From Bigelowiella natans CCMP2755 (lineage: Eukaryota > Protista > Cercozoa): 64,000 nt of DNA. Position 1 is the first letter of the stretch, and every line of letters begins with the position of its first letter. The translations under genes and the position numbers were made by a program. The stretch lies in contig ADNK01003482.1 of assembly GCA_000320545.1 (NCBI GenBank), forward strand, positions 1-64,000, in the 5' to 3' direction. The notes under the pieces are model-generated. The model saw only the letters and a program-made list of their open reading frames with translations. It was not told the origin of the DNA and did no database searches. Below, piece after piece: positions 1 to 21,510 of this stretch.

Positions 1-1050
1 GTAATATTCCTTGATAAGGAGTTCTATTCCACAAAGAATGTCTGATATCCACCTTGCGGCTTGATCATCTTCAGTTTGAGTGAGTCTTGAGATATTTCTC
101 TTCTCACGTAATTTTTTAATTGCTCCACAAGACTGAGCAAGATGCCGATGAAGACAGCTACGTCCCATCCTGGTCTAACGATCTACATGGGCATTCCGTT
201 GTGATTTTTTCCCTTTGCCCGCACAGGGACAAGTCATTTTGATTCCCCCCCCCCCCCCCCCCCCCCCCCCCCCTACGAAGGTGGAAGGGCCTCTGAAAGG
301 CGTTCCAATATGTGGTGCTATTGGAGATCAACAGGTAGTCGATATGATATGGTAGATTTATTGATAGATTATAACATGTCACCTGCTACCTAGGGGGCAT
401 TGGTTGGCCAAAGGTGCTTTGAAAAAGGTGAAAGATCCTATGATGTCAATGATGTTGATGATGATGATGATGATGATGAGGAAGAAGAAGAAGAAGAAGA
501 AGAAGATTGGCAGTGTGATCATGGTGGTGATAGCACATATAAATGAAGATGAAATCATACCAAACTTTAAGATTAGAAACATTTTATAAGTTATCTAATA
601 CTACTGCTGCTGCTACTACTACTACTACTACTACTACTCCACTATCACTAGAAATACTTCTTACAATAAAAGGAATGTTAGTTACCTTTGAAGTGTTGCT
701 CGTATGACTACGTATTCAGCTTGATTATAATGATGAATATGATATTACATGAATTCTAGCTCCTTCTTCTCAATCTTCAACTCCATATTCATTCTTTCTC
801 GTCTTAGGTCAATTGAAGAATACGTTTGGAACCGGACAATTCCTTCTCCTCAACACTGGTACCACTACTCTACTACTGCTGCTGCTGCTGTGTACGTCGT
901 CACCGCTATCTATCTAAACGAGGAGAGAGAGAGAGAGAGAAAGAGAGGAAGAATACAGATAGGGTGAGGTATTTTCTCTTATTAGTATGTGCGGGCTATT
1001 TTTCCTCTTGAACTTTGTCCTTGTTCGCTACTGCTGCAACAAATACAACA

Positions 1051-7262: not shown

Positions 7263-8512
7263 ATGTCGTCTATCGTGAGGAAGTTGTTGTTTCCATTGCC
7301 GGACCCTCCCGACTATGATGACACCACTTTTCCTGAAGACTTAATTTGGGTGCCCCAAGATGAGAAGAAAGAAAAACCCATGATACCCTGCATCTTCCTT
7401 CCACACAAAGGGTTAGTCACCATTTTGAGTACATTAGTTACTGCTATCAATCCTGAAAGTTGAACTTGAATCAGAGCGAAGAGGATGGTCATCTATTGTC
7501 ACGGAAATGGGTGTGACCTTGGAACCATATATGAGGAACTGTTACGCTATAGGGAATATTGGCAGGTGTGTGAAAAATGCAATGTTGCTAAATTTGTTTT
7601 ATATCGGAAATGTTGTTGGATTTTTAGGTTCACATACTAGCAATGGAATATCCGGGTTATGGTCTTTGTAAAGGAGAACCTGGCGAGAAATCAATCAACG
7701 AAGCAGTCTTCAGTGTGTATGATTACATTACGCAGCAGCTTCGATGGCCTTCCCTTTTCATATTTTTCTATGGGAGATCCATTGGCACGGGCCCAGTTTG
7801 TAAGCTGGTCTCTACCTTACAAACTCAGGGAACACGAGTAGGTGGAATAATTCTCCACTGTGCATACACCTCTATTCGGGCTGTGGTGAGCAATGCTATT
7901 GGTAGTGTAGCAGCTGCACTTATAACAGACAGGTGGCAAAATATTAAAGAAGTTCAGTCCATTGACTGTCCGATGCTCCTGATTCATGGGCAAGCAGACA
8001 CTCTCATTCCATTTACACACTCCGAATTATTATACGACAAATGTAAATCACAACATAAACAGCTAGTTATTGTTGCTGAAGCCACCCACAATACGTTCGA
8101 TGAAGTGGAGGATATAAAGAAGCCGATTGAGAAGTTTATAAAGCGAGCGGCCATGTTGATGCAGAAGACGTTGAAACATTATGCAGACGCACGTAAGAAA
8201 AAACCCACGAGAAATAAGCAAAAGAAGTCATCCCAACGGAATAGCAGGATAGAAGATTCCAAAAACATTTTTGCAGGGTCAAGTAAAGAGGTATTGCTCG
8301 ATTCTCCCAAATACGCCCCAAAAGTTATGAGGAGGAATCCAGAGGAATCTAATACACTCTTTCAGGAACCTCGGCATCTTGAAAAGAATAGCGGGAGAAA
8401 TGGTCATAAAAAGAAACTTCATAAACAAGGGAAAAAGAAATCTGCACCCAGAGACACATCGAGAAACTCTTTTACGTGCCAGTCAAGTAGTTTCTCCGTG
8501 AACTCTAAATGA
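7263..8512 (+). CDS. ABHD17: ABHD17-family alpha/beta hydrolase (depalmitoylase-like)
   Basis: Three exons (~7263-7411, 7474-7566, 7628-8512). Motifs YCHGNGCDLG, EYPGYG, GRSIG (nucleophile), HGQADTLIP, ATHN. Basic low-complexity tail. Confidence 0.88.
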
Positions 8513-9253
8513 TGAAAGATGATGACTTTCATAATTGGTTGATGCATGTGTACACTTCTGCACTTAATTGCCGCTGAGCTGACATGTGCAGTTGTGTCAT
8601 AATCCAAACAATGTAGCTATGACGAAGTGTTATTTCACCTTAACTAGGGCATGCATACGATACGACCGTAACCACTTGTGTAGATTTATTTGCATTGCAG
8701 CTGACAGTGCCACAAGTAATGCATGAGCGATCGATCGCTGAGCCATGCAACATGCAACTAACATAAGCGAACATGTACAAGACGCGAAGACTGCCGCAAG
8801 CATGAACAATGCACGGCCGCCACTCGAGTACTAGAAATACGCCATTGATGTGGAAACGATTTTTTGGAAGCTGCTTGTAGAACCCTGTCACCCATCTGGT
8901 CATCATTTGCGACGGTTATTGAGCCCTGTTCGCCTTTTCCCACAACCAGCTGAAACCCGGTGATCGACACTCTAGATCTGCAATGCATGGAATTTTTTTT
9001 GTGGTTTTCCAAGCTTATTGCTTGATGAAGTTTGGTGCGGCCACCATGCTCGCAAAGCCGATGTTGCAAGTTTCTGCTGGCTGTGCCACAACTGTAGCAC
9101 CAGACCAGTAGCCTTTACATACACTTTTTTTACCTTCATCATGATAAGTAATATGACATTCGGTTTCATGATGGCATAGCAGCAACAGCGATAACTGTGC
9201 TAAGGCGCATGTTATCTGCCGTGCTCATAAACCCACAGGTGTGCAGACTGGCT

Positions 9254-12233
9254 TCAATAAAACACGGTATCTTGCATTAGATGCCTCGCTTCCTTGCGCA
9301 CTTGAGGCAACTTACCTACTTCCCTCCACAAGTAGAAGTCTAGAGCATCGCTAGTTACAAGCTTTTCAGGGTCATGAAAATCATCCCCATGTGTGTCCGT
9401 ACCATGACTAATATTCTTATTTTTCCTTTGGTATTCTTTTGGAATTTTCCACTTTAGAGAATTCAGTTTTGCTGCTACTTGGGTGGTATAAAGCACTTCG
9501 CGCAACATGTCTTTGTCTTCTTGGTACATTAACATCTTTTCCGCCTCTTTTAGAGGAACCAACACCACTTCGCAAGCTTCTGAATTGGGTCGTAGTTGTG
9601 CTTCGTCCTGGATGAAAGAAGGAAGAAGTGGAGGAGGGGAGGAACAAAGAAGACAATAAGGAAGTCTGACAACATAACGCAATTGAAATATATCGTTCTC
9701 CTTTTTCGTTAAAAAACGTTTTTGTCTTTTGACTCAGATTTATTCTCCAACCACGCTCGTTAAATACACACACGAGTAACAATAAAGAAGCAAGCCAAAC
9801 AGATGGACATAGGATTGTCAATGACGTTTATCAGGCCTAACACGCAAATCAAAAATTATTTATGAGCATTATAACCCCTTTCCTTCAATCCCCCCCATCA
9901 GTCTCCGTGACTTATCGCTTCTCTCATTACCAACGTAGAACACCAGGCAAAATAGAGGCGTTCAGTCTTGTGCATGACCAATGAAGGCCGCTTGGTTCCA
10001 TCAGGGTATGCAGAGTGCCTCTTCCATTTGTCACTATGCAGCTTTCCAATAAAGCTATAGCTCCTTTCAGAATAGGCAGTTTGGAGAAGCCCAGACACAC
10101 TCACTCCTGTTTCCTCCCGTGTTTCTCGAAGTGCACAACTCTCTATATTCTCACCAGCATCTGGATGTCCTTTTGGAAAAGTATAGCCCCTACTCGTTTT
10201 TTTGGGTTTGATTAACAGAACACATGTTTGCTGCACTTGCTGCGGATGCTGTTGAACTTCTCGTCCAAGTTCCTTGCTAGCGGGGTCGGTAGAGCATACA
10301 ACGATGCAACCATAGCTATAATCCTCCATTTCATCAAGCCGTGTTTCCCCTGTGTAAGATTAATTATAGATATATTATAAATGTAGACATGCATTGGACT
10401 CATAGAATGATTGTTAAAATAAAGATTAATCAGTTTGACTTGCTTGCTTAAGATCTGATTCGGAGAGGGGTCGACATCGAGGACGTGAGTATGTAGCCTC
10501 TAGTTTCATGTTTCTCGGTTTTACATTGATCAACTTTCGTCGTTTACTATTTTGCGACGATGGCGATGACGGTAGCGCCTGTTAATGATCAATTTACAGA
10601 ATGAGAACCCGGAACCAACCATTAAAATAAGAAGAAGATAGTTGCGGAAATATAATTATCATGTTGCAATGAGTGAACATGCTACTCGCAAACCTGAGGT
10701 CCAAGTAAAAGTTCCACACCATGGCGTCCATTAATTAGCTCTCCCATTACGATGCCTTCCAGGTCATTGTATTCCTTTTTCTTTAAATCCTGTAGTTTGA
10801 CTTTGTGTCCGACAGAAAAAGATGTAGGTGATGATGAGGAGGATAGTGACGCCTCTTTCTGTGACTTCCCTTTGCCATCGTCTTCGGTTCCATTGCTGTG
10901 CTCAGAGGCTCCAATATTTTCCTTATTGAAGTTAGACGCAGTGTCAGGATTTCATTATTCATATAAGTTATATTCTTCGTTTGAGATGGTAAAGGTATCA
11001 TCACTCAACTACGACTTAGCTACCTTCATGTCCCAAGTACTAGCTTCTTTCTTCAGTTCTTTTAGAATCATCTCACAAGCAACGATACTTCCGGCACGCA
11101 GAGCGCATTCCATCTCCCGGTTTTTGAGGGGCTGGCGTGAGTCAATATTCCTTCCAAGCTCCTCCGAATACTCCAGTATTCCATAGTGACGTAGCGCAGC
11201 CGGAAGCACGTTGTCTGCGCAAACGGTCATGTTGTCAATATCCTCGAAGTCAAAAAGCGAGGGTTCTTCGTCTTTAAATCTTCGATGCAGATCATTTACA
11301 AGAAGCTGTGCCTTTTTGTAGACATGCACCGTTCTCACTGTGGTACTTCTAGCGACAACCGAGTCTTGTTTTTTGTCTTTTTTTCCCTCTAGATTCTTGG
11401 CACCACTGTCCTGCTGTCTAAATTCGTAAGCATCTTTGAAAACAGAGGGGAATGTTTTACCAAGTTCTTTCACAAAGTCTGCAGCGGGTCTAATGCTACT
11501 TTTGCCCCTTTGTTGGCCCATTCCCCGTATATCCCGAAGTGTTTCCATAACAAAATCACTGAAACCTTCCCATTGTCTAGCGCGCATTGTGCGGCCCATC
11601 TCGTTACAAACAGCGACAATCTTCGACGCAAGGGGCCTCACAGGGCTATGTTGCGTGGAGTACATGGCTGGCTTTATCTCCACATCCATGTCTATGGGGA
11701 TGCCAAAAAGCTGCGGTATATCGATCAGCTTAAGATTGAGGAGAAAGTCCGCATTTATTGTTTGCGAGATATGGGCTCCGATGCAGCCGTGAGCGATGGT
11801 TTCATAGGCTCCACGTTTACAGTATTGGTGCAGCAGCTCCCTATAACCGGAACCGAAGTTTAGGGCGTGTAGAAGACCAAGGAAATTTATCTCAGATGAG
11901 CGATCCTGAGATTTACCAAACGAAAATACGCATATTTATCATTTATTTTGGGATTCTTATTCGAAGCCTACTTTATACCAATAACTAGACGTAGATACTG
12001 ACCTTGAATTGCAGCGGAAACGGTGTGCGGGTTGCAGAACGCAGTTCTTTTGGCCCGATTGTAGCTGCGAATTTCACAACAGCTTCCTCATGAACTTTGA
12101 CGTGCCGAGACACGGATTCTAGTGCAAGATACTGGTAAGTCGATGTCTTGATCAACTCGAACATGCTAATATCCCCCTCATCCTTGTTCCCCTTCTCCTC
12201 CTTCGGAGCAGCTGCTGCTGGTCCTGCTTCCAT
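9254..12233 (-). CDS. QNG1: Queuosine salvage protein (QNG1/DUF2419, Q-nucleotide N-glycosylase) with inserted SH3-like module and Nudix hydrolase domain; about 750 aa, 6 exons
   Basis: Exons 12233-12003, 11905-11024, 10921-10694, 10578-10440, 10349-9931 and 9607-9254 join in frame through GT-AG introns. DUF2419 motifs: SRHV, LNFGSG, FKD, YKKAQL, MTVCADNVLPAALRHYGILEYS, ECALRAGSI, and terminal LDFYLW...RH..QDTVFY*. Nudix box: FPKGHPDAGENIESCALRETREETG. Confidence 0.85.
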
Positions 12234-12806
12234 GCTCGGTCGTCGTCGTCGTCGTCGTCGTCGTCGTCTTCTCTCGCTGTTACCAGATCTAGTCTACTGC
12301 CGCAACTGCTACTGTGTTTAATCGATCGATCTCGAGAGAATCTCCAAAAAAATTGAACAGAATTGCATAAAAGTCTTAACTGGATTTCAGATTTCACGTT
12401 GATGTGCGTGACAACCCACAAATTCACCTAAAATTGGACCAATATGAAGTTCGGAAGTTCAGATCGACTACCGCTACTCCTCCTCATCCACGCCTGGAAT
12501 TTATAGGTGCGACAACCTATTTTTGTTACAAATTGGAGAAATCGTAGACCACATGCGGACGTTTAGCGTCATCACCAACGTAGCATCATCATCCACGCAT
12601 AGGTTGGTTACATGATAACCCGAGATAACGGTGAATGGAGGCGCGTTGATGATGGATGATATGATAGACCGTGTGTGGTTCTGGCGCATGTAGATTTGAT
12701 CAACGCTTTGTTCATTGTTCATTGTTCATCATTGACCGCTGATAGGAGGACACGAGTAGCAGGACCAGGAGGCATTAAATAGAATAGAAAGATCAATCCC
12801 ACAAGA

Positions 12807-17018: not shown

Positions 17019-17099
17019 CTAACTGTGCATTGCACACAGTGTGTGCACGTTGCATTTGTTGTCTTAACAACAGTAGTAAGATTTCCCACCACATCACAG

Positions 17100-17900
17100 A
17101 GTGCAACCGTTCAATGATTCACACACTGTTCAAGCCTCACAACGTGTGAACCACAATGCAAACATGAATTTGGCAAATTGTTGGCTGTTGCACACCACAG
17201 GACACCACAGCACACCACAGCACACCAGGTGTGATTGCAGGTGAATTTTCCATGATCGTGATGATGACAGGGGGAAAGCAATGGGAAACAAGATGTTTCG
17301 ATCTGCAGTGACACATTCATCTCTTGCTCAATGATGTTGTGATGCTCGCAGCACTGCCGCTCATTCGCTGGTTTCGCAATGAACCAATCTAGCAATGGCA
17401 ACCGCCTCAATTGGTGTCCATTGCAACAGGTACTGTGTCCACAGTCATTGCTCTCATCCTTTGAGCAAGCTCCAGTGCTGGCAACCTGGCAATGGCAGCT
17501 CTGGAGCTAGTTGCCCACGTGAGCTCACAAGTGAACGAGCTTTTGCGCGTGGCACAAACCGTTGGCCACGCACGCGCACCAAAACTGCACTCAACCTGCA
17601 ACGCGTGCAACGTGACAAGTGACACGTCGTGTGTGAGGACAGTGCAACGAGCACTCGGCTCACTGCGATGCGCGCTCAGCGCCAGAGCTAGCGGCCAGCT
17701 AGCCAGGCAGGCGTGAGCACAACAACATTTGCTAGCTTGCACCTGCTGATTCCAACAGTTCAGCTCAAAGAATCATTGGATGTGCTGATTCATCCAATTC
17801 CTCTTCAAAGCACCATGAAAAATTGAGGGTTCGTTTCGCATCCGCCTGTCACGAGCGCTCAGACATTGTTTGGTGTCGTCCTCCTGCATCTGCATGCAGT
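17100..17900. other. TpA-depleted zone (CTAG spared)
   Basis: Hand count: only 6 TA dinucleotides in ~800 bp, 5 of them in CTAG. Rich in TGCA/CATG/CACA, with CpG present. Confidence 0.85.
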
Positions 17901-18151
17901 GCTCTCGATGACAACTAACTTCTTCTTGCGGAAGCAACAACACGTCAGTAATTTATCTGATGATAATATTCCTGAATGTGATGCATCTTTATTGTAGCTG
18001 CTGTGAAATTAGGATCACAGGTTGATCAACAATAGTTTGAATTTGATTAATTTAGATGTATTGGGAACACAAATTGGCCTAAAAGCAGAGTACTACAAGA
18101 CAACACACAAGACAACAACCACAAAAGTCGCCCCCCCCCCTCCTGGTGACT

Positions 18152-19468
18152 ATGACATCTCATCATCAACTGGTCGATGAGTTTGGAGAAGAAGCAGCAG
18201 CTGACCTAGAATACTTTGATTCGCTTCTCAATACAGTTCCTGCCAATTATTATTATCCAAAACAACACGACTCGGCCAGCGCTGCGATTGGAAAGTTGTC
18301 AGCGAAACAGCGCAAGTCTTCGGGCATCACAGATCCCCACCGCATGCTAAGCGTTCTTGATGTAGCTAAATTCGTGTGGAGTAAAGCTTCTGGATCCAAA
18401 AGGTCCAATTTCAACACAGCTGACACAACGAAGAAGGCAAAAGGTGCTAAAAAATCACGCAGTGAAGCCAAGAGCATCGACGCTTTACGCCAACTACTGA
18501 AAGATAAAATGGAAAGTTTACGGTCAGGACGTGGTTCAAAAAATGAAAACGGTGGTGGTAAAATCAAACAGAAGGTTGCATCAAAGAAAAAAACAAAAGC
18601 TGATGATACTGGGGCAAAAAAAAGGAAACATCAGAGGGAATCGAAAATGAATCCTACGAAAAGACTCAAATCTGAGGATCAAGCAACTGAAGAGGTTGGT
18701 GACGGTGACCTCATGTTCAGCGGACTTAAAAATAATTCAGAAAAGAATTCTAGATCTATGAAGAAGAATAAGAAAAAGGCGAAGAAATCGAGTGAGGAAC
18801 TACAACTCCAAAGGATACAGGAATTTGAGAAGAAGGTGTGAGTACTCTTTCGAGAAAATTCATTTAAGTCAAATAATAAGTCTTTGCTTTATCAGCTTAA
18901 GAATGTCAGCACGAAGGAACGGGAAGAAATTCTTCATGAGAGACGAATTTCCCATGCCATAAGTCGAGCGCAGGGAATTGCAGTGAAAGACGATAAAAAG
19001 TAAAATGTTCACCTTATTGCGAATAGCAGAATCTCTCAAAATTATAATTGTATGAGGGAAATCTTTATAAAAAATTAAAATGTCACTAACATTCATAGTT
19101 CCATTGTAATGACTCTATCGTAAGCGTAAGCTCTATCATCTTTTTTAAAATCGGTGTATAAGACATATGACTTGTTTCAGATTGCTACGGAAGCAAATAT
19201 CACGCAAGAATGCAAAGAAGGCGAAATCAAAGAAGGCGTGGGAATCACGAATGGTACCTATCGACATTTCCTATAACTTGTTGAAAGACTTCTCCAAACA
19301 AAAGGATATATCACCTGATCTAAATTTTCTGGCATGTATTAAATTTCTCAGCAACAGCTCCAGACGGAGCAGAAGACTGAATTAGATAAACGAGATCAAA
19401 ATGTCAAGGAATATAATGCAAAGAAATCAGAGGCGCGAATTGCTAAACGAAAGGCAAAAAGAAAATAA
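18152..19468 (+). CDS. SURF6: SURF6/Rrp14 ribosome biogenesis protein
   Basis: YFDSLLNTVPANYY (Rrp14 N-terminus), LRQLLKDKMESLR, RAQGIAVKDD, LLRKQISRKNAKKAKSKKAWESR. Lys-rich and spliced. Confidence 0.85.
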
Positions 19469-20125
19469 TGCTTCTTCGCAATTAATGCAGCAGCCCGGCA
19501 CATGATATAATTTATGTATCATCTTTGATGACCATGGCAATATACCATGATGTTATTAAGCACAACAAGTATGATTTGCATTTTTATCTCTGACATTATA
19601 CAGCTCTATGCAAGTAAATGATAACGTTCGTATGTTACTTTTTGCAATAGTTGGTCAGAGAATCTGAGTCTTACGCATGTGAACTAGCTGCTAGAGAGCA
19701 GCCAGCTCAGCTCATCGTCATGCATGGCTATTTGTAGCAACCCACCCGCCATGCAAGCAGCATTCATAGACTTTAAATTGACGCTCTAATTCATCGTCAC
19801 GCATGTCATTTTTTTTAGCTCTGTGCGTTGTTTCCATGCTAGCACGCGTGCGTATACAGTAGCGAAGACATATGCACAGGTAGATAGTCTCACATCAGTG
19901 CACGCTGCACTTATTATATACACTGTCCATGCTGCTAACAGCGAGCAAGCATGCTAGCAGCATGCACATGTCTATGCACACCATGCGTGCTGTTCCATCT
20001 GCATCCCAATGTCATCCACGGATACACATCTGAATCATCAATATAATTTGCGTTTTGCTCGCACATGTGTAAAAATTGTGAGGGCACGCTACGATGCAGC
20101 ACCTGCCAAGGAAAGTATTTCGCTG

Positions 20126-20214
20126 TTATTGAGTGTACCATAAAGCTGAGAAGAGGTCAATGACCCTTGTGTGCTTACCTGTGATTGCCGAAACAAATAT
20201 GTAAATAGATGCAT

Positions 20215-20271
<57 letters not shown>

Positions 20272-20830
20272 TTTAAAAAGATGATTAATTCAATATATAG
20301 AATATGGCTTACATCTATTGCTGACGATTGCGATCTATCTCCATCTCTGCAAAAAAGCAGCACTGCACTCATTCGTGTTAATGGCTGAATGAAAAGAGGG
20401 AGAGGAGGGTGGAAGGGGAAAGAAAAATGCAAAAAATGTGTTTATACGTAGTCTTACCCCCATCGTCCCTGGAGATATCTAATATCTTTCTCGATCTGAT
20501 GAGCCAAATAATAGAATGCAGCCATACTTGTGAGACGATGGTCAAGTGGACACGAGATCCTACTGAGCTAACACCATGAGAAATAACTAGCTGCTTGTGA
20601 TCGGGGTTGCAGCTGTTTGCTTAAATTACTACTCACCTCTACATGTGTTGCTTCAGCTACCCTGCACATAACTTTTGCTAGATCAACAACCTCGACACCC
20701 TGATCAATACATATATGATCCAAAACTGAAGAAATGAGAAGGATTGGGAAATATTTTCCAGAAGAGAGTATAGGAGGGAGGAGGAGGAGGAATATTACAA
20801 CTACTGAGAAGAATCCAAAATTAGTTGCAC

Positions 20831-20867
<37 letters not shown>

Positions 20868-21510
20868 TGGTCGTTGTGGTAATGATGATAATAACCTCAC
20901 GCATTTCTTCTCACCCTTCTTCATATTATGAACTACCTACAAAGACAAACAGCTTGCCAAAGCACCAAAATCAATACCTTGAGATGCGACGGAAGGAGAA
21001 GTCCAAGTCCAAGCTTATCATAAACCTGCATATCATCATCATCACCATCATCATCATCATTATCTCACTATCGGCTTCCTTCATTATCACTAGTCATCAC
21101 CATCTCTCTTAAAGGGTCTTTTCTCCAAGTTCCAAGGATCTGCATGGTCATACAGATAGTAGCATGAATAATCTCCGTGGTTACGTGTGCATTTGTTGTA
21201 TCATAATGATAATCAGTAGTAGCAGCAGCGCACGAAAGCATATTGTCCTGTAATGGAGTCGGTCTCCTCCAGAAATTACCCATCTCGGCTGATATATCGT
21301 CACAGCTGGGAAGCTTAGTTCATTAAGCAAATCCTCACACTGAGTTGACAAAGAGAGGATGGTAACAATAATGACGACACTTGGTGCTCCTTCTCCTTCC
21401 ATATCTTCTTTTTCTCGATACCCGAAATGATGATGCGAACAATAGACCAAAGCTGCTACGTCGTCATTTTTCAAATAATTTATGAGAGGCTTGATTCGCT
21501 ACATAACCCC

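What the first reader, a model, noticed from the sequence alone, without database searches (positions are those of the whole stretch)
9254..12233. Queuosine-salvage glycosylase QNG1 with a complete Nudix hydrolase inserted inside it: candidate two-step Q-nucleotide salvage enzyme
Seen in sequence: the ORF track suggests two genes, but six exons splice in frame (intron phases 0,0,0,1,0; 2253 nt, 750 aa). The order is DUF2419 core, then SH3-like module, then Nudix domain, then the DUF2419 C-terminal signature LDFYLW..GK...RH..QDTVFY*. The QNG1 tail is missing after the core and reappears only after the Nudix domain, which indicates domain insertion rather than neighbouring genes. Established: QNG1/DUF2419 releases queuine from queuosine-5'-monophosphate, and Nudix enzymes (here Ap4A-hydrolase-like, FPKGH..G(E)....ALRETREETG) cleave NDP-X, NTP or dinucleotide substrates to NMPs. 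Inference: the Nudix domain may convert Q-di/triphosphates or Q-containing dinucleotides to Q-5'MP and channel it to the glycosylase, linking nucleotide-pool sanitation to queuine salvage. I do not know of this architecture being described.
Basis: partly seen in the sequence, partly recalled or inferred. Interest (0 to 1): 0.88.

Follow-up and report, generated by a model that had tools for sequence, protein, structure and literature searches.

The report
Nudix hydrolase nested inside QNG1-family glycosylase
In the alga Bigelowiella natans, one six-exon gene encodes a queuine-salvage-type glycosylase that has a small beta-barrel and a complete Nudix pyrophosphatase inserted into its last surface loop, which suggests (untested) that the two enzymes work in sequence on a modified guanine nucleotide.

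Summary
All five predicted splice junctions appear in spliced transcript contigs from three studies, and single contigs span exons 1-5. The product is 750 aa. Its order is QNG1-family core, SH3/KOW-like barrel, Nudix domain, then the 30-residue QNG1 tail.

That tail carries the base-binding Asp and Trp and the catalytic C-terminal Tyr, and it aligns with canonical QNG1 tails. A folded relative with the same architecture superposes on bacterial Qng1 from residue 9 to its last residue (Z 33.3).

Natural relatives form a series: barrel only (Amorphochlora), barrel plus Nudix (this gene and one other chlorarachniophyte), and Nudix only (a B. natans paralog on another contig). The scan already reported that paralog (s1-739045). 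The Nudix box and the glycosylase catalytic residues are intact and under purifying selection.

The two-step Q-nucleotide idea remains an inference, with two caveats. The gene belongs to a divergent "ADN" subfamily that lacks two phosphate-pocket residues of characterised Qng1. The genome also holds a canonical QNG1. Public gene models are truncated, and I found no paper describing the architecture. I rate it a new variant of a known kind, of moderate to high interest.

The parts
12003..12233 (-). Exon 1 (77 codons): start codon at 12233-12231 and the N-terminal helices of the QNG1-family fold.
   Evidence: Matches residues 1-77 of the public model P0001. Joint 11904/12002 is seen in X1 and X4.
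11024..11905 (-). Exon 2 (294 codons): QNG1-family core. HhH Lys at 11317-11315 (= StQng1 K199). Catalytic Asp at 11215-11213 in CADNVLP (= D231), followed by N and V where Qng1 has Y232 and K233. Glu at 11110-11108 (= E267). LNFGSGYR at 11863-11840.
   Evidence: Pfam PF10343 at 84.3 bits. PDB 7u07/7uk3 alignment. Coordinates.
10694..10921 (-). Exon 3 (76 codons): Ser-rich linker and the first four strands of an SH3/KOW-like beta-barrel.
   Evidence: No Pfam or PDB sequence match. The homologous segment of L006 folds as a 5-strand barrel (pLDDT about 80-90) whose best matches are Spt5/NusG KOW, NdhS, PsaE and SH3 at Z 5-7.1.
10440..10578 (-). Exon 4 (46 codons plus 1 nt, phase 1): the last barrel strand (KRRKLINVKPRNMKLE) and the linker to Nudix.
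   Evidence: Alignment A3. Joints 10577/10693 and 10348/10439.
9931..10349 (-). Exon 5: N-terminal two thirds of the Nudix domain. FPKGH at 10179-10165. Intact Nudix box GX5EX7REUXEEXGU at 10170-10102.
   Evidence: Pfam PF00293 at 48.7 bits. Motif coordinates.
9608..9930 (-). Intron 5 (323 nt), spliced in X1 and X15 but also retained. Retention gives an in-frame stop after 10 codons and the truncated 643-aa public model.
   Evidence: joint and retained contigs. P0001 ends in the read-through.
9254..9607 (-). Exon 6: Nudix C-terminal strand and helix (about 9607-9473), a linker, then the QNG1 tail at 9346-9257. Asp 9340-9338 (= D298), Trp 9328-9326 (= W302), His 9283-9281 (= H316), terminal Tyr 9259-9257 (= Y323), stop 9256-9254.
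8934..9253 (-). Probable 3' UTR.
   Evidence: 3'-biased raw RNA reads of X22 and contigs of X1, X4 and X15 continue below the stop to about 8934-9170.

Best explanation
Shown: this is one B. natans gene and one mRNA encoding a 750-aa polypeptide. A QNG1-family (PF10343) HhH N-glycosidase fold is interrupted just before the helix and tail that complete its active site. The interruption is a nested insertion of an SH3/KOW-like barrel followed by a complete Nudix pyrophosphohydrolase that is closest in fold to Ap4A hydrolases. Both catalytic sets are intact and under purifying selection. Inferred: the protein is bifunctional and the two activities act in sequence on the same modified guanine-type nucleotide, most likely queuosine nucleotides. 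The tethered Nudix domain would cleave a pyrophosphate-containing form (such as Q di- or triphosphate, or a dinucleoside polyphosphate) to the 5'-monophosphate. The glycosidase would then release the base (queuine) for tRNA-guanine transglycosylase, which the genome also encodes.
For: All five junctions are in spliced contigs from three studies, and single contigs cover E1-E5. The tail after the Nudix domain aligns with canonical tails: 56.7% identity over 30 aa to P0006, and the Asp, Trp, Lys and two Arg columns are at least 90% conserved in 63 sequences. The AF2 model of relative P0154 has core and tail at pLDDT 95-98 and superposes on wild-type StQng1 7uk3 (Z 33.3, 311 of 319 residues, model 9..674 on chain 5..323), while its Nudix part matches human Ap4A hydrolase 4ijx (Z 12.5). 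The architecture recurs in the B. natans paralog P0151 (100% tblastn match on contig C1447) and in P0154 of another chlorarachniophyte; Amorphochlora P0152 has the barrel only. The equivalents of K199, D231, E267, D298, W302, H316 and Y323, and the full Nudix box, are kept in all three Nudix-bearing copies. Between the paralogs dS exceeds 0.9 in every segment (at least 1.27 in both Nudix parts). dN/dS is 0.18 (Nudix N part), 0.06 (Nudix C part) and 0.014 (tail). The genome has TGT genes. Q-5'MP is the known QNG1 substrate and its upstream supply is unresolved (PMC9881137).
Against: No activity data exist. The Nudix domain reaches no equivalog-level family, and its nearest structures include Ap4A/Ap6A hydrolases, RppH, MutT1 and decapping enzymes, so its substrate is open. 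The glycosidase half has N and V where StQng1 has Y232 and K233, which contact the 5'-phosphate and matter for complementation. It also has F for W299 and K for Q306, so Q-5'MP specificity cannot be assumed (PMC9881137 sections 22-23). The genome keeps a canonical QNG1 on C915. The insertion site is a loop that other members fill with low-complexity sequence, and the linkers are predicted disordered. The Nudix part of the model has low confidence (pLDDT 33-67), so no inter-domain geometry can be claimed. The E5/E6 joint has only 28-30 letters on one side, and intron 5 is often retained.
Confidence: 0.55

Rival explanations
1. The fusion is real, but the Nudix domain is a general housekeeping ApnA/NTP pyrophosphatase inserted at a permissive loop. 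The two activities share a polypeptide without sharing a substrate pathway.
For: The insertion site is expandable: other family members carry 50-90 extra low-complexity residues there. The linkers are predicted disordered. The Nudix domain is closest in fold to generic Ap4A hydrolases. Amorphochlora has the barrel without Nudix.
Against: The Nudix insertion has been kept in two old paralogs (dS at least 1.27 in the Nudix parts) and in a second species, with dN/dS of 0.06-0.18. There is no close stand-alone copy in the genome: the next Nudix is 42% identical over 61 aa. Nesting inside an enzyme next to its active-site tail is a rare arrangement to keep without a functional link.
Confidence: 0.22
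2. The glycosidase half is not a Q-5'MP enzyme. The ADN subfamily acts on another guanine-type nucleotide or on a differently phosphorylated Q species, and the Nudix domain prepares that substrate.
For: Y232 to N, K233 to V, W299 to F and Q306 to K, with probable changes at F75, Y93 and W94, all relative to StQng1. The extra tail Lys and Arg residues are at least 90% conserved in the subfamily. A canonical QNG1 coexists in the genome. None of the proteins held from the 150 best representatives has the ADY form.
Against: The guanine-type base-recognition Asp and Trp and the C-terminal Tyr are kept. The N-terminal alignment to StQng1 is weak (10.6 bits), so the pocket changes there are uncertain. 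Databases name this subfamily QNG1, and I could not establish whether any characterised member (S. pombe, Entamoeba, plants) belongs to it.
Confidence: 0.18
3. The Nudix domain is a non-catalytic ligand sensor or regulatory module controlling the glycosidase.
For: Nudix folds serve as sensors in regulators such as NrtR and AraR, which appear among the structural matches.
Against: The complete catalytic Nudix box is conserved in all three copies. Sensor Nudix domains usually have degenerate boxes (my own knowledge).
Confidence: 0.03
4. This is an artefact: two adjacent genes, or a chimeric or read-through transcript.
For: The public models split or truncate the genes: P0001 stops in intron 5 and P0002 stops in intron 2 of the paralog. 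Intron 5 is often retained.
Against: There is no QNG1 tail after the core. The tail is present only after the Nudix domain, in four proteins from at least three species. Contigs join E1-E5, all introns are in frame, and complete MMETSP ORFs have the same order.
Confidence: 0.02

Closest known systems
QNG1 / Qng1 (DUF2419, Pfam PF10343), queuosine-5'-phosphate N-glycosylase; structures 7U07, 7UK3 (Sphaerobacter thermophilus) and 7UGK, 8DL3 (human)
   Same: Same HhH glycosylase fold (relative's model at Z 33.3 and 31.7). Keeps the HhH Lys and Asp, the base-binding Asp and Trp, the Glu and His, and a Tyr as the very last residue, whose free carboxylate is part of the active site in Qng1 (PMC9881137).
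   Different: About 375 residues (barrel plus Nudix) are inserted between the last core helix and the tail. The phosphate-pocket Y232 and K233 are N and V, W299 is F and Q306 is K. The motif LNFGSGYR replaces LNFCFW. It belongs to a separate ADN subfamily, while a canonical copy exists elsewhere in the genome.
Asymmetric Ap4A hydrolases of the Nudix family (human NUDT2 3U53/4IJX, C. elegans 1KTG, Aquifex 3I7U, Thermus Ndx1 1VC8)
   Same: FPKGH motif, complete Nudix box and best structural matches (Z 12.0-12.5). Sequence matches to Ndx1 (E 2.9e-8 with P0154) and to 3i7u across the exon 5/6 boundary.
   Different: It is not a stand-alone 130-150 aa enzyme. It carries a lineage-specific loop (HSDKWKRH..PD..KRP) and reaches no equivalog cut-off. 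RppH, MutT1 and decapping Nudix enzymes score almost as well, so its substrate class is unassigned.
KOW / SH3-like small beta-barrels (Spt5/NusG KOW, NdhS, PsaE)
   Same: Five-strand barrel of about 55 residues; best match is DSIF KOW6-7 5ohq at Z 7.1, rmsd 1.9 over 51 residues.
   Different: No sequence-family match. Z below 8 shows only a common fold.

Membership tests
Q_salvage / DUF2419 (PF10343) | Pfam profile match above the gathering score | tested here: met
   E2 scores 84.3 bits against a cut-off of 25, covering profile positions 147-245 of 285. The remaining 40 profile positions are supplied by the tail in E6.
Q_salvage / DUF2419 (PF10343) | HhH-motif Lys and catalytic Asp (StQng1 K199, D231) | tested here: met
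   Lys in VYKKAQ at 11317-11315 and Asp in CADNVLP at 11215-11213, aligned to 7u07.
Q_salvage / DUF2419 (PF10343) | Base-recognition Asp and Trp (D298, W302) and a C-terminal Tyr as the last residue (Y323), with His H316 | tested here: met
   LDFYLW, RH and TVFY-stop lie in E6 after the Nudix domain. These columns are at least 90% conserved in A1.
Q_salvage / DUF2419 (PF10343) | Complete Qng1 fold, including the tail packed into the active site | tested here: met
   Tested on relative P0154, not on the window protein itself. Z 33.3, rmsd 2.5 A, 311 of 319 residues of 7uk3, and tail pLDDT of 95-97.
Characterised QNG1 (Q-5'MP-specific enzyme) | 5'-phosphate pocket residues Y232 and K233 (also R80, Q306) | tested here: not met
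   Y232 to N, K233 to V and Q306 to K. R80 falls in a gap of a weak alignment (PMC9881137 section 23).
Characterised QNG1 (Q-5'MP-specific enzyme) | Aromatic cyclopentenediol pocket (W48, Y93, W94, W299) | tested here: inconclusive
   W299 to F is secure. The other positions rest on a 10.6-bit N-terminal alignment.
Characterised QNG1 (Q-5'MP-specific enzyme) | Queuine release from Q-5'MP | not testable with these tools
   Needs an enzyme assay.
NUDIX (PF00293) | Pfam match above the gathering score and a whole domain | tested here: met
   E5 scores 48.7 bits against a cut-off of 21.1. Relatives cover profile positions 5-132 and 16-132 of 134. E6 continues the domain.
NUDIX (PF00293) | Nudix box GX5EX7REUXEEXGU with its catalytic Glu residues | tested here: met
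   The box lies at 10170-10102 and is also intact in P0151 and P0154.
Ap4A hydrolase subfamily of Nudix | Specific assignment by sequence model or substrate | tested here: inconclusive
   Best folds are Ap4A hydrolases at Z 12.0-12.5, but on a low-pLDDT region, and g5Rp, MutT1 and RppH are nearly tied. No NCBIfam equivalog reaches its cut-off.
SH3/KOW-like beta-barrel | Five-strand small barrel fold | tested here: met
   Model m9c1c081c7d85 has pLDDT of about 80-90 in the barrel and matches KOW, NdhS, PsaE and SH3 at Z 5-7.1. This is fold level only.

The most novel reading that the evidence does not exclude
The ADN-type QNG1-like proteins are a distinct, uncharacterised enzyme subfamily, widespread in protists and coexisting here with a canonical QNG1. 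Their phosphate and 7-substituent pockets differ from those of Qng1. The chlorarachniophyte Nudix insertion would then be a Rosetta-stone clue to a two-step route (pyrophosphate-linked nucleotide to 5'-NMP to free base plus ribose-5-phosphate). That route could act on queuosine di- or triphosphates or on another modified guanine nucleotide, and it is so far unrecognised in nucleotide salvage or sanitation.
Probability: 0.2. Interest if true: 0.8.

Novelty: new variant of a known kind. Interest (0 to 1): 0.62.

Why it matters
QNG1 acts on Q-5'-monophosphate, but how cells make, limit or recycle phosphorylated queuosine is unresolved (PMC9881137). Here a Nudix pyrophosphatase is permanently built into a QNG1-family enzyme, beside the tail that closes its active site, and has been kept in two old paralogs and a second species. 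That is a concrete, testable pointer to a pyrophosphatase step feeding the glycosidase. It is also a clean natural example of nested domain insertion into an enzyme whose free C-terminus is catalytic. Finally, it shows that the public gene models for both B. natans copies are truncated.

Tried and rejected
- Exons were searched by reference instead.
- **Stand-alone Nudix relatives:** The search for homologous proteins with E5 found none. Searches with the insertion regions of P0001 and P0154 found only P0001, P0151 and P0011. The wider distribution is therefore probably under-sampled.
- **Barrel identity:** The protein atlas gave no usable hit for E3 and was busy on a second try. A PDB sequence search of E3 gave nothing meaningful.
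- **Bacterial neighbourhood test:** The test was not run.
- **Literature:** Zallot et al. 2014 (PMC4136680) is not held, so I could not check whether fusions or subfamilies were noted there.
- **Nudix subfamily:** NCBIfam gave no equivalog for the Nudix domain.
- **RNA genes:** No tRNA or Rfam family explains the very high RNA depth from 12674 upward.
- **Raw reads:** X22 raw RNA reads were too few (57) to test the junctions.
- **Unused job:** Complex prediction was not used, because I do not claim a defined domain-domain interface.
- **Rejected readings:** Two neighbouring genes, and allelic copies (dS above 0.9 in every segment).
Full report
**Gene model and transcripts**

The window is from the nuclear genome of the chlorarachniophyte alga Bigelowiella natans. 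The public protein with 100% identity to exon 2 is jgi/Bigna1/91892. On the minus strand between 12233 and 9254 there are six exons with GT..AG introns in phases 0,0,0,1,0. They sum to 2253 nt, which is 750 codons plus a stop.

I laid the contigs of three public runs from three studies, plus one raw RNA run, on 8800-12800. All five predicted junctions appear as CT..AC joints at exactly the predicted bases. Two contigs, X1 record 3 (1933 nt) and X4 record 13 (1938 nt), run from exon 1 to the end of exon 5 with four introns removed. The glycosylase core and the Nudix domain are therefore on one RNA.

The exon 5/6 joint is present in X1 (depth 28.8) and X15 (8.1). It has only 28-30 letters on its short side because the assembly graph branches there. 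The branch exists because intron 5 (323 nt) is also retained in contigs of X1 (depth 5.5), X4 (7.45) and X15 (4.2). No other intron is retained, so this is isoform variation and not DNA contamination.

Independent support for the exon 5/6 junction comes from the paralog's complete transcript ORF, P0151. It has the same junction position in the protein (..AWCSTL / ..QLRPNSEA..). The few raw reads of X22 are 3'-biased and lie below the stop codon, and none marks an end after the core. Exons were searched by reference, and the whole architecture was tested on natural full-length relatives.

**Domain content**

- **Exon 2** matches Pfam Q_salvage (84.3 bits), but only profile positions 147-245 of 285.
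- **Exon 5** matches NUDIX (48.7 bits).
- **Exon 6, first 40 residues** continue the Nudix domain, matching Aquifex Ap4A hydrolase 3i7u residues 89-126.
- **Exon 6, last 30 residues** read LDFYLW..GK....R...RH....TVFY-stop. Canonical family members end in the same way. P0006 residues 317-345 align to window 9346-9257 at 56.7% identity, and tails are printed side by side.

In a 63-sequence alignment, the Asp, Trp, Lys and two Arg columns of this tail are at least 90% conserved. P0006 in turn aligns end to end with bacterial StQng1 up to its last residue.

According to Hung et al. 2023 (PMC9881137), this tail is catalytically essential. D298 and W302 hold the 7-deazaguanine. [quoted passage not shown]

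In the window gene these residues lie after the Nudix domain: Asp 9340-9338, Trp 9328-9326, His 9283-9281 and Tyr 9259-9257. The HhH Lys (11317-11315), the catalytic Asp (11215-11213) and the Glu (11110-11108) lie in exon 2.

**Relatives form a series**

- **P0154** (674 aa, a complete MMETSP ORF from another chlorarachniophyte; transcript contig L006) has core, barrel, Nudix and tail.
- **P0151** (657 aa) is the complete transcript of a B. natans paralog on contig C1447, with a 100% tblastn match. It has core, Nudix and tail but no barrel, and its locus has no exon-3-like sequence.
- **P0152** of Amorphochlora amoebiformis (475 aa) has core, barrel and tail but no Nudix.

The window gene is closer to P0151 (80% in the core) than to P0154 (54%). 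The paralog therefore most likely lost the barrel secondarily.

Among the 150 best representatives of 1.84 billion proteins, only these chlorarachniophyte proteins carry Nudix. Other members with long loops at the same site carry Ala/Pro/Gln-rich low-complexity sequence there. The loop is therefore a permissive, expandable site.

The public gene models are wrong. P0001 (643 aa) reads into retained intron 5, and P0002 (346 aa) stops in the paralog's intron. The scan had already noted the paralog on other DNA (s1-739045). My results agree with that note.

**Fold**

An AlphaFold2 model of P0154 has pLDDT 95-98 for the core and the tail, about 80-90 for the barrel, and only 33-67 for the Nudix domain, where the alignment is shallow.

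It superposes on wild-type StQng1 7uk3 with Z 33.3, rmsd 2.5 A and 311 of 319 residues, model 9..674 on chain 5..323. It also superposes on human QNG1 7ugk with Z 31.7. The tail therefore returns to complete the fold.

Residues 454-620 match human and C. elegans Ap4A hydrolases (Z 12.0-12.5). ASFV g5Rp, MutT1 and RppH score nearly as well.

The barrel was modelled alone from L006:1125-1364. It is a five-strand barrel resembling KOW domains, NdhS, PsaE and SH3 at Z 5-7.1, which is a fold-level statement only. Linkers on both sides of the inserted domains are predicted disordered, so I claim no inter-domain geometry.

**Selection and genome context**

Between the two B. natans paralogs dS exceeds 0.9 in every segment compared, and is at least 1.27 in both Nudix parts. 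The copies are therefore old and are not alleles. dN/dS is 0.18 for the Nudix N part, 0.06 for the Nudix C part and 0.014 for the tail. The Nudix box is intact in all three Nudix-bearing proteins.

The genome has tRNA-guanine transglycosylase genes. It has no close stand-alone copy of this Nudix domain.

First, the gene belongs to a subfamily I call ADN after its HhH motif. Where StQng1 and human QNG1 have ADY-K/R, this subfamily has ADN-V (at least 90% conserved). This replaces Y232 and K233, which contact the 5'-phosphate of Q-5'MP and whose alanine mutants complement poorly (PMC9881137 section 23). In addition W299 is F and Q306 is a highly conserved Lys. LNFGSGYR replaces LNFCFW, and Y93 and W94 probably differ, although that N-terminal alignment is weak.

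None of the proteins I held from the 150 best representatives has the ADY form. The subfamily occurs in dictyostelids, oomycetes, Arcella and Heterolobosea, and it is auto-named QNG1. I could not establish whether any experimentally characterised member belongs to it.

Second, the same genome has a third family gene on contig C915, with many small exons. Its pieces read LNFCFWP, FLKRAQIFVGDVYGAFEGKG, DYRIPQLLHHL, AGSEEEIAIRAATV and QLDWMLWERGE..PHHRTKTVYY-stop. That is a canonical QNG1 without an insertion. The Nudix-bearing copies may therefore be specialised.

**Mechanism**

The architecture, the intact catalytic motifs and the selection are shown. It is inferred that the tethered Nudix domain converts a pyrophosphate-containing form of a modified guanine nucleotide, most plausibly queuosine di- or triphosphate or a dinucleoside polyphosphate, to the 5'-monophosphate, and that the glycosidase then releases the base.

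I give this about 0.55. The rivals are:
- independent housekeeping Nudix activity at a permissive loop (0.22);
- a glycosidase substrate other than Q-5'MP (0.18);
- a sensor Nudix (0.03);
- an artefact (0.02).

**Novelty**

I found no paper that mentions DUF2419 or Qng1 together with Nudix in a relevant way, or that describes this fusion. The proteins are in public sets with both Pfam domains precomputed, but the correct 750-aa product of this gene is not among them. I rate it a new variant of a known kind.

Noticed in passing
G000:C915 about 17050-21300 (+), = L005 2054-6299: A third QNG1-family gene of the canonical ADY/PHHR type, split into many small exons and with no insertion. Only one exon passed the Pfam genome search.
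   Followed up: partly
G000:C1447 about 229330-231920 (+), = L004 4333-6921: A paralog of the window gene (P0151) with Nudix but without the SH3/KOW-like exon. Its public model P0002 (346 aa) is truncated in an intron. The scan noted it earlier as s1-739045.
   Followed up: yes
window 9608-9930: Intron 5 is the only intron retained in the transcript contigs. In X4 only the retained form was assembled. Retention truncates both the Nudix domain and the catalytic tail, so it could act as an on/off isoform switch.
   Followed up: partly
window 12674-12800 (+ strand): Very high RNA depth (up to about 890) starts abruptly at 12674, with several different upstream sequences in the contigs and an A/T polymorphism at 12694. 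No tRNA or Rfam family matches there. It could be a repeated or spliced exon of a highly expressed + strand gene.
   Followed up: partly
window 12240-12278: A (GAC)n/(GTC)n trinucleotide repeat lies immediately upstream of the start codon, in the 5' UTR. The read tool skipped it as a repeat.
   Followed up: no
window 9045-9085: A 41-nt stretch in the 3' UTR region matches contigs that continue into unlike sequence on both sides (loose ends in X1 and X4). It is probably a short repeat shared with another locus.
   Followed up: no
window 7643-8512 (+): A 289-aa ORF with a lysine-rich tail. At a glance it resembles an alpha/beta-hydrolase (GRSIGTG motif). It was not searched.
   Followed up: no
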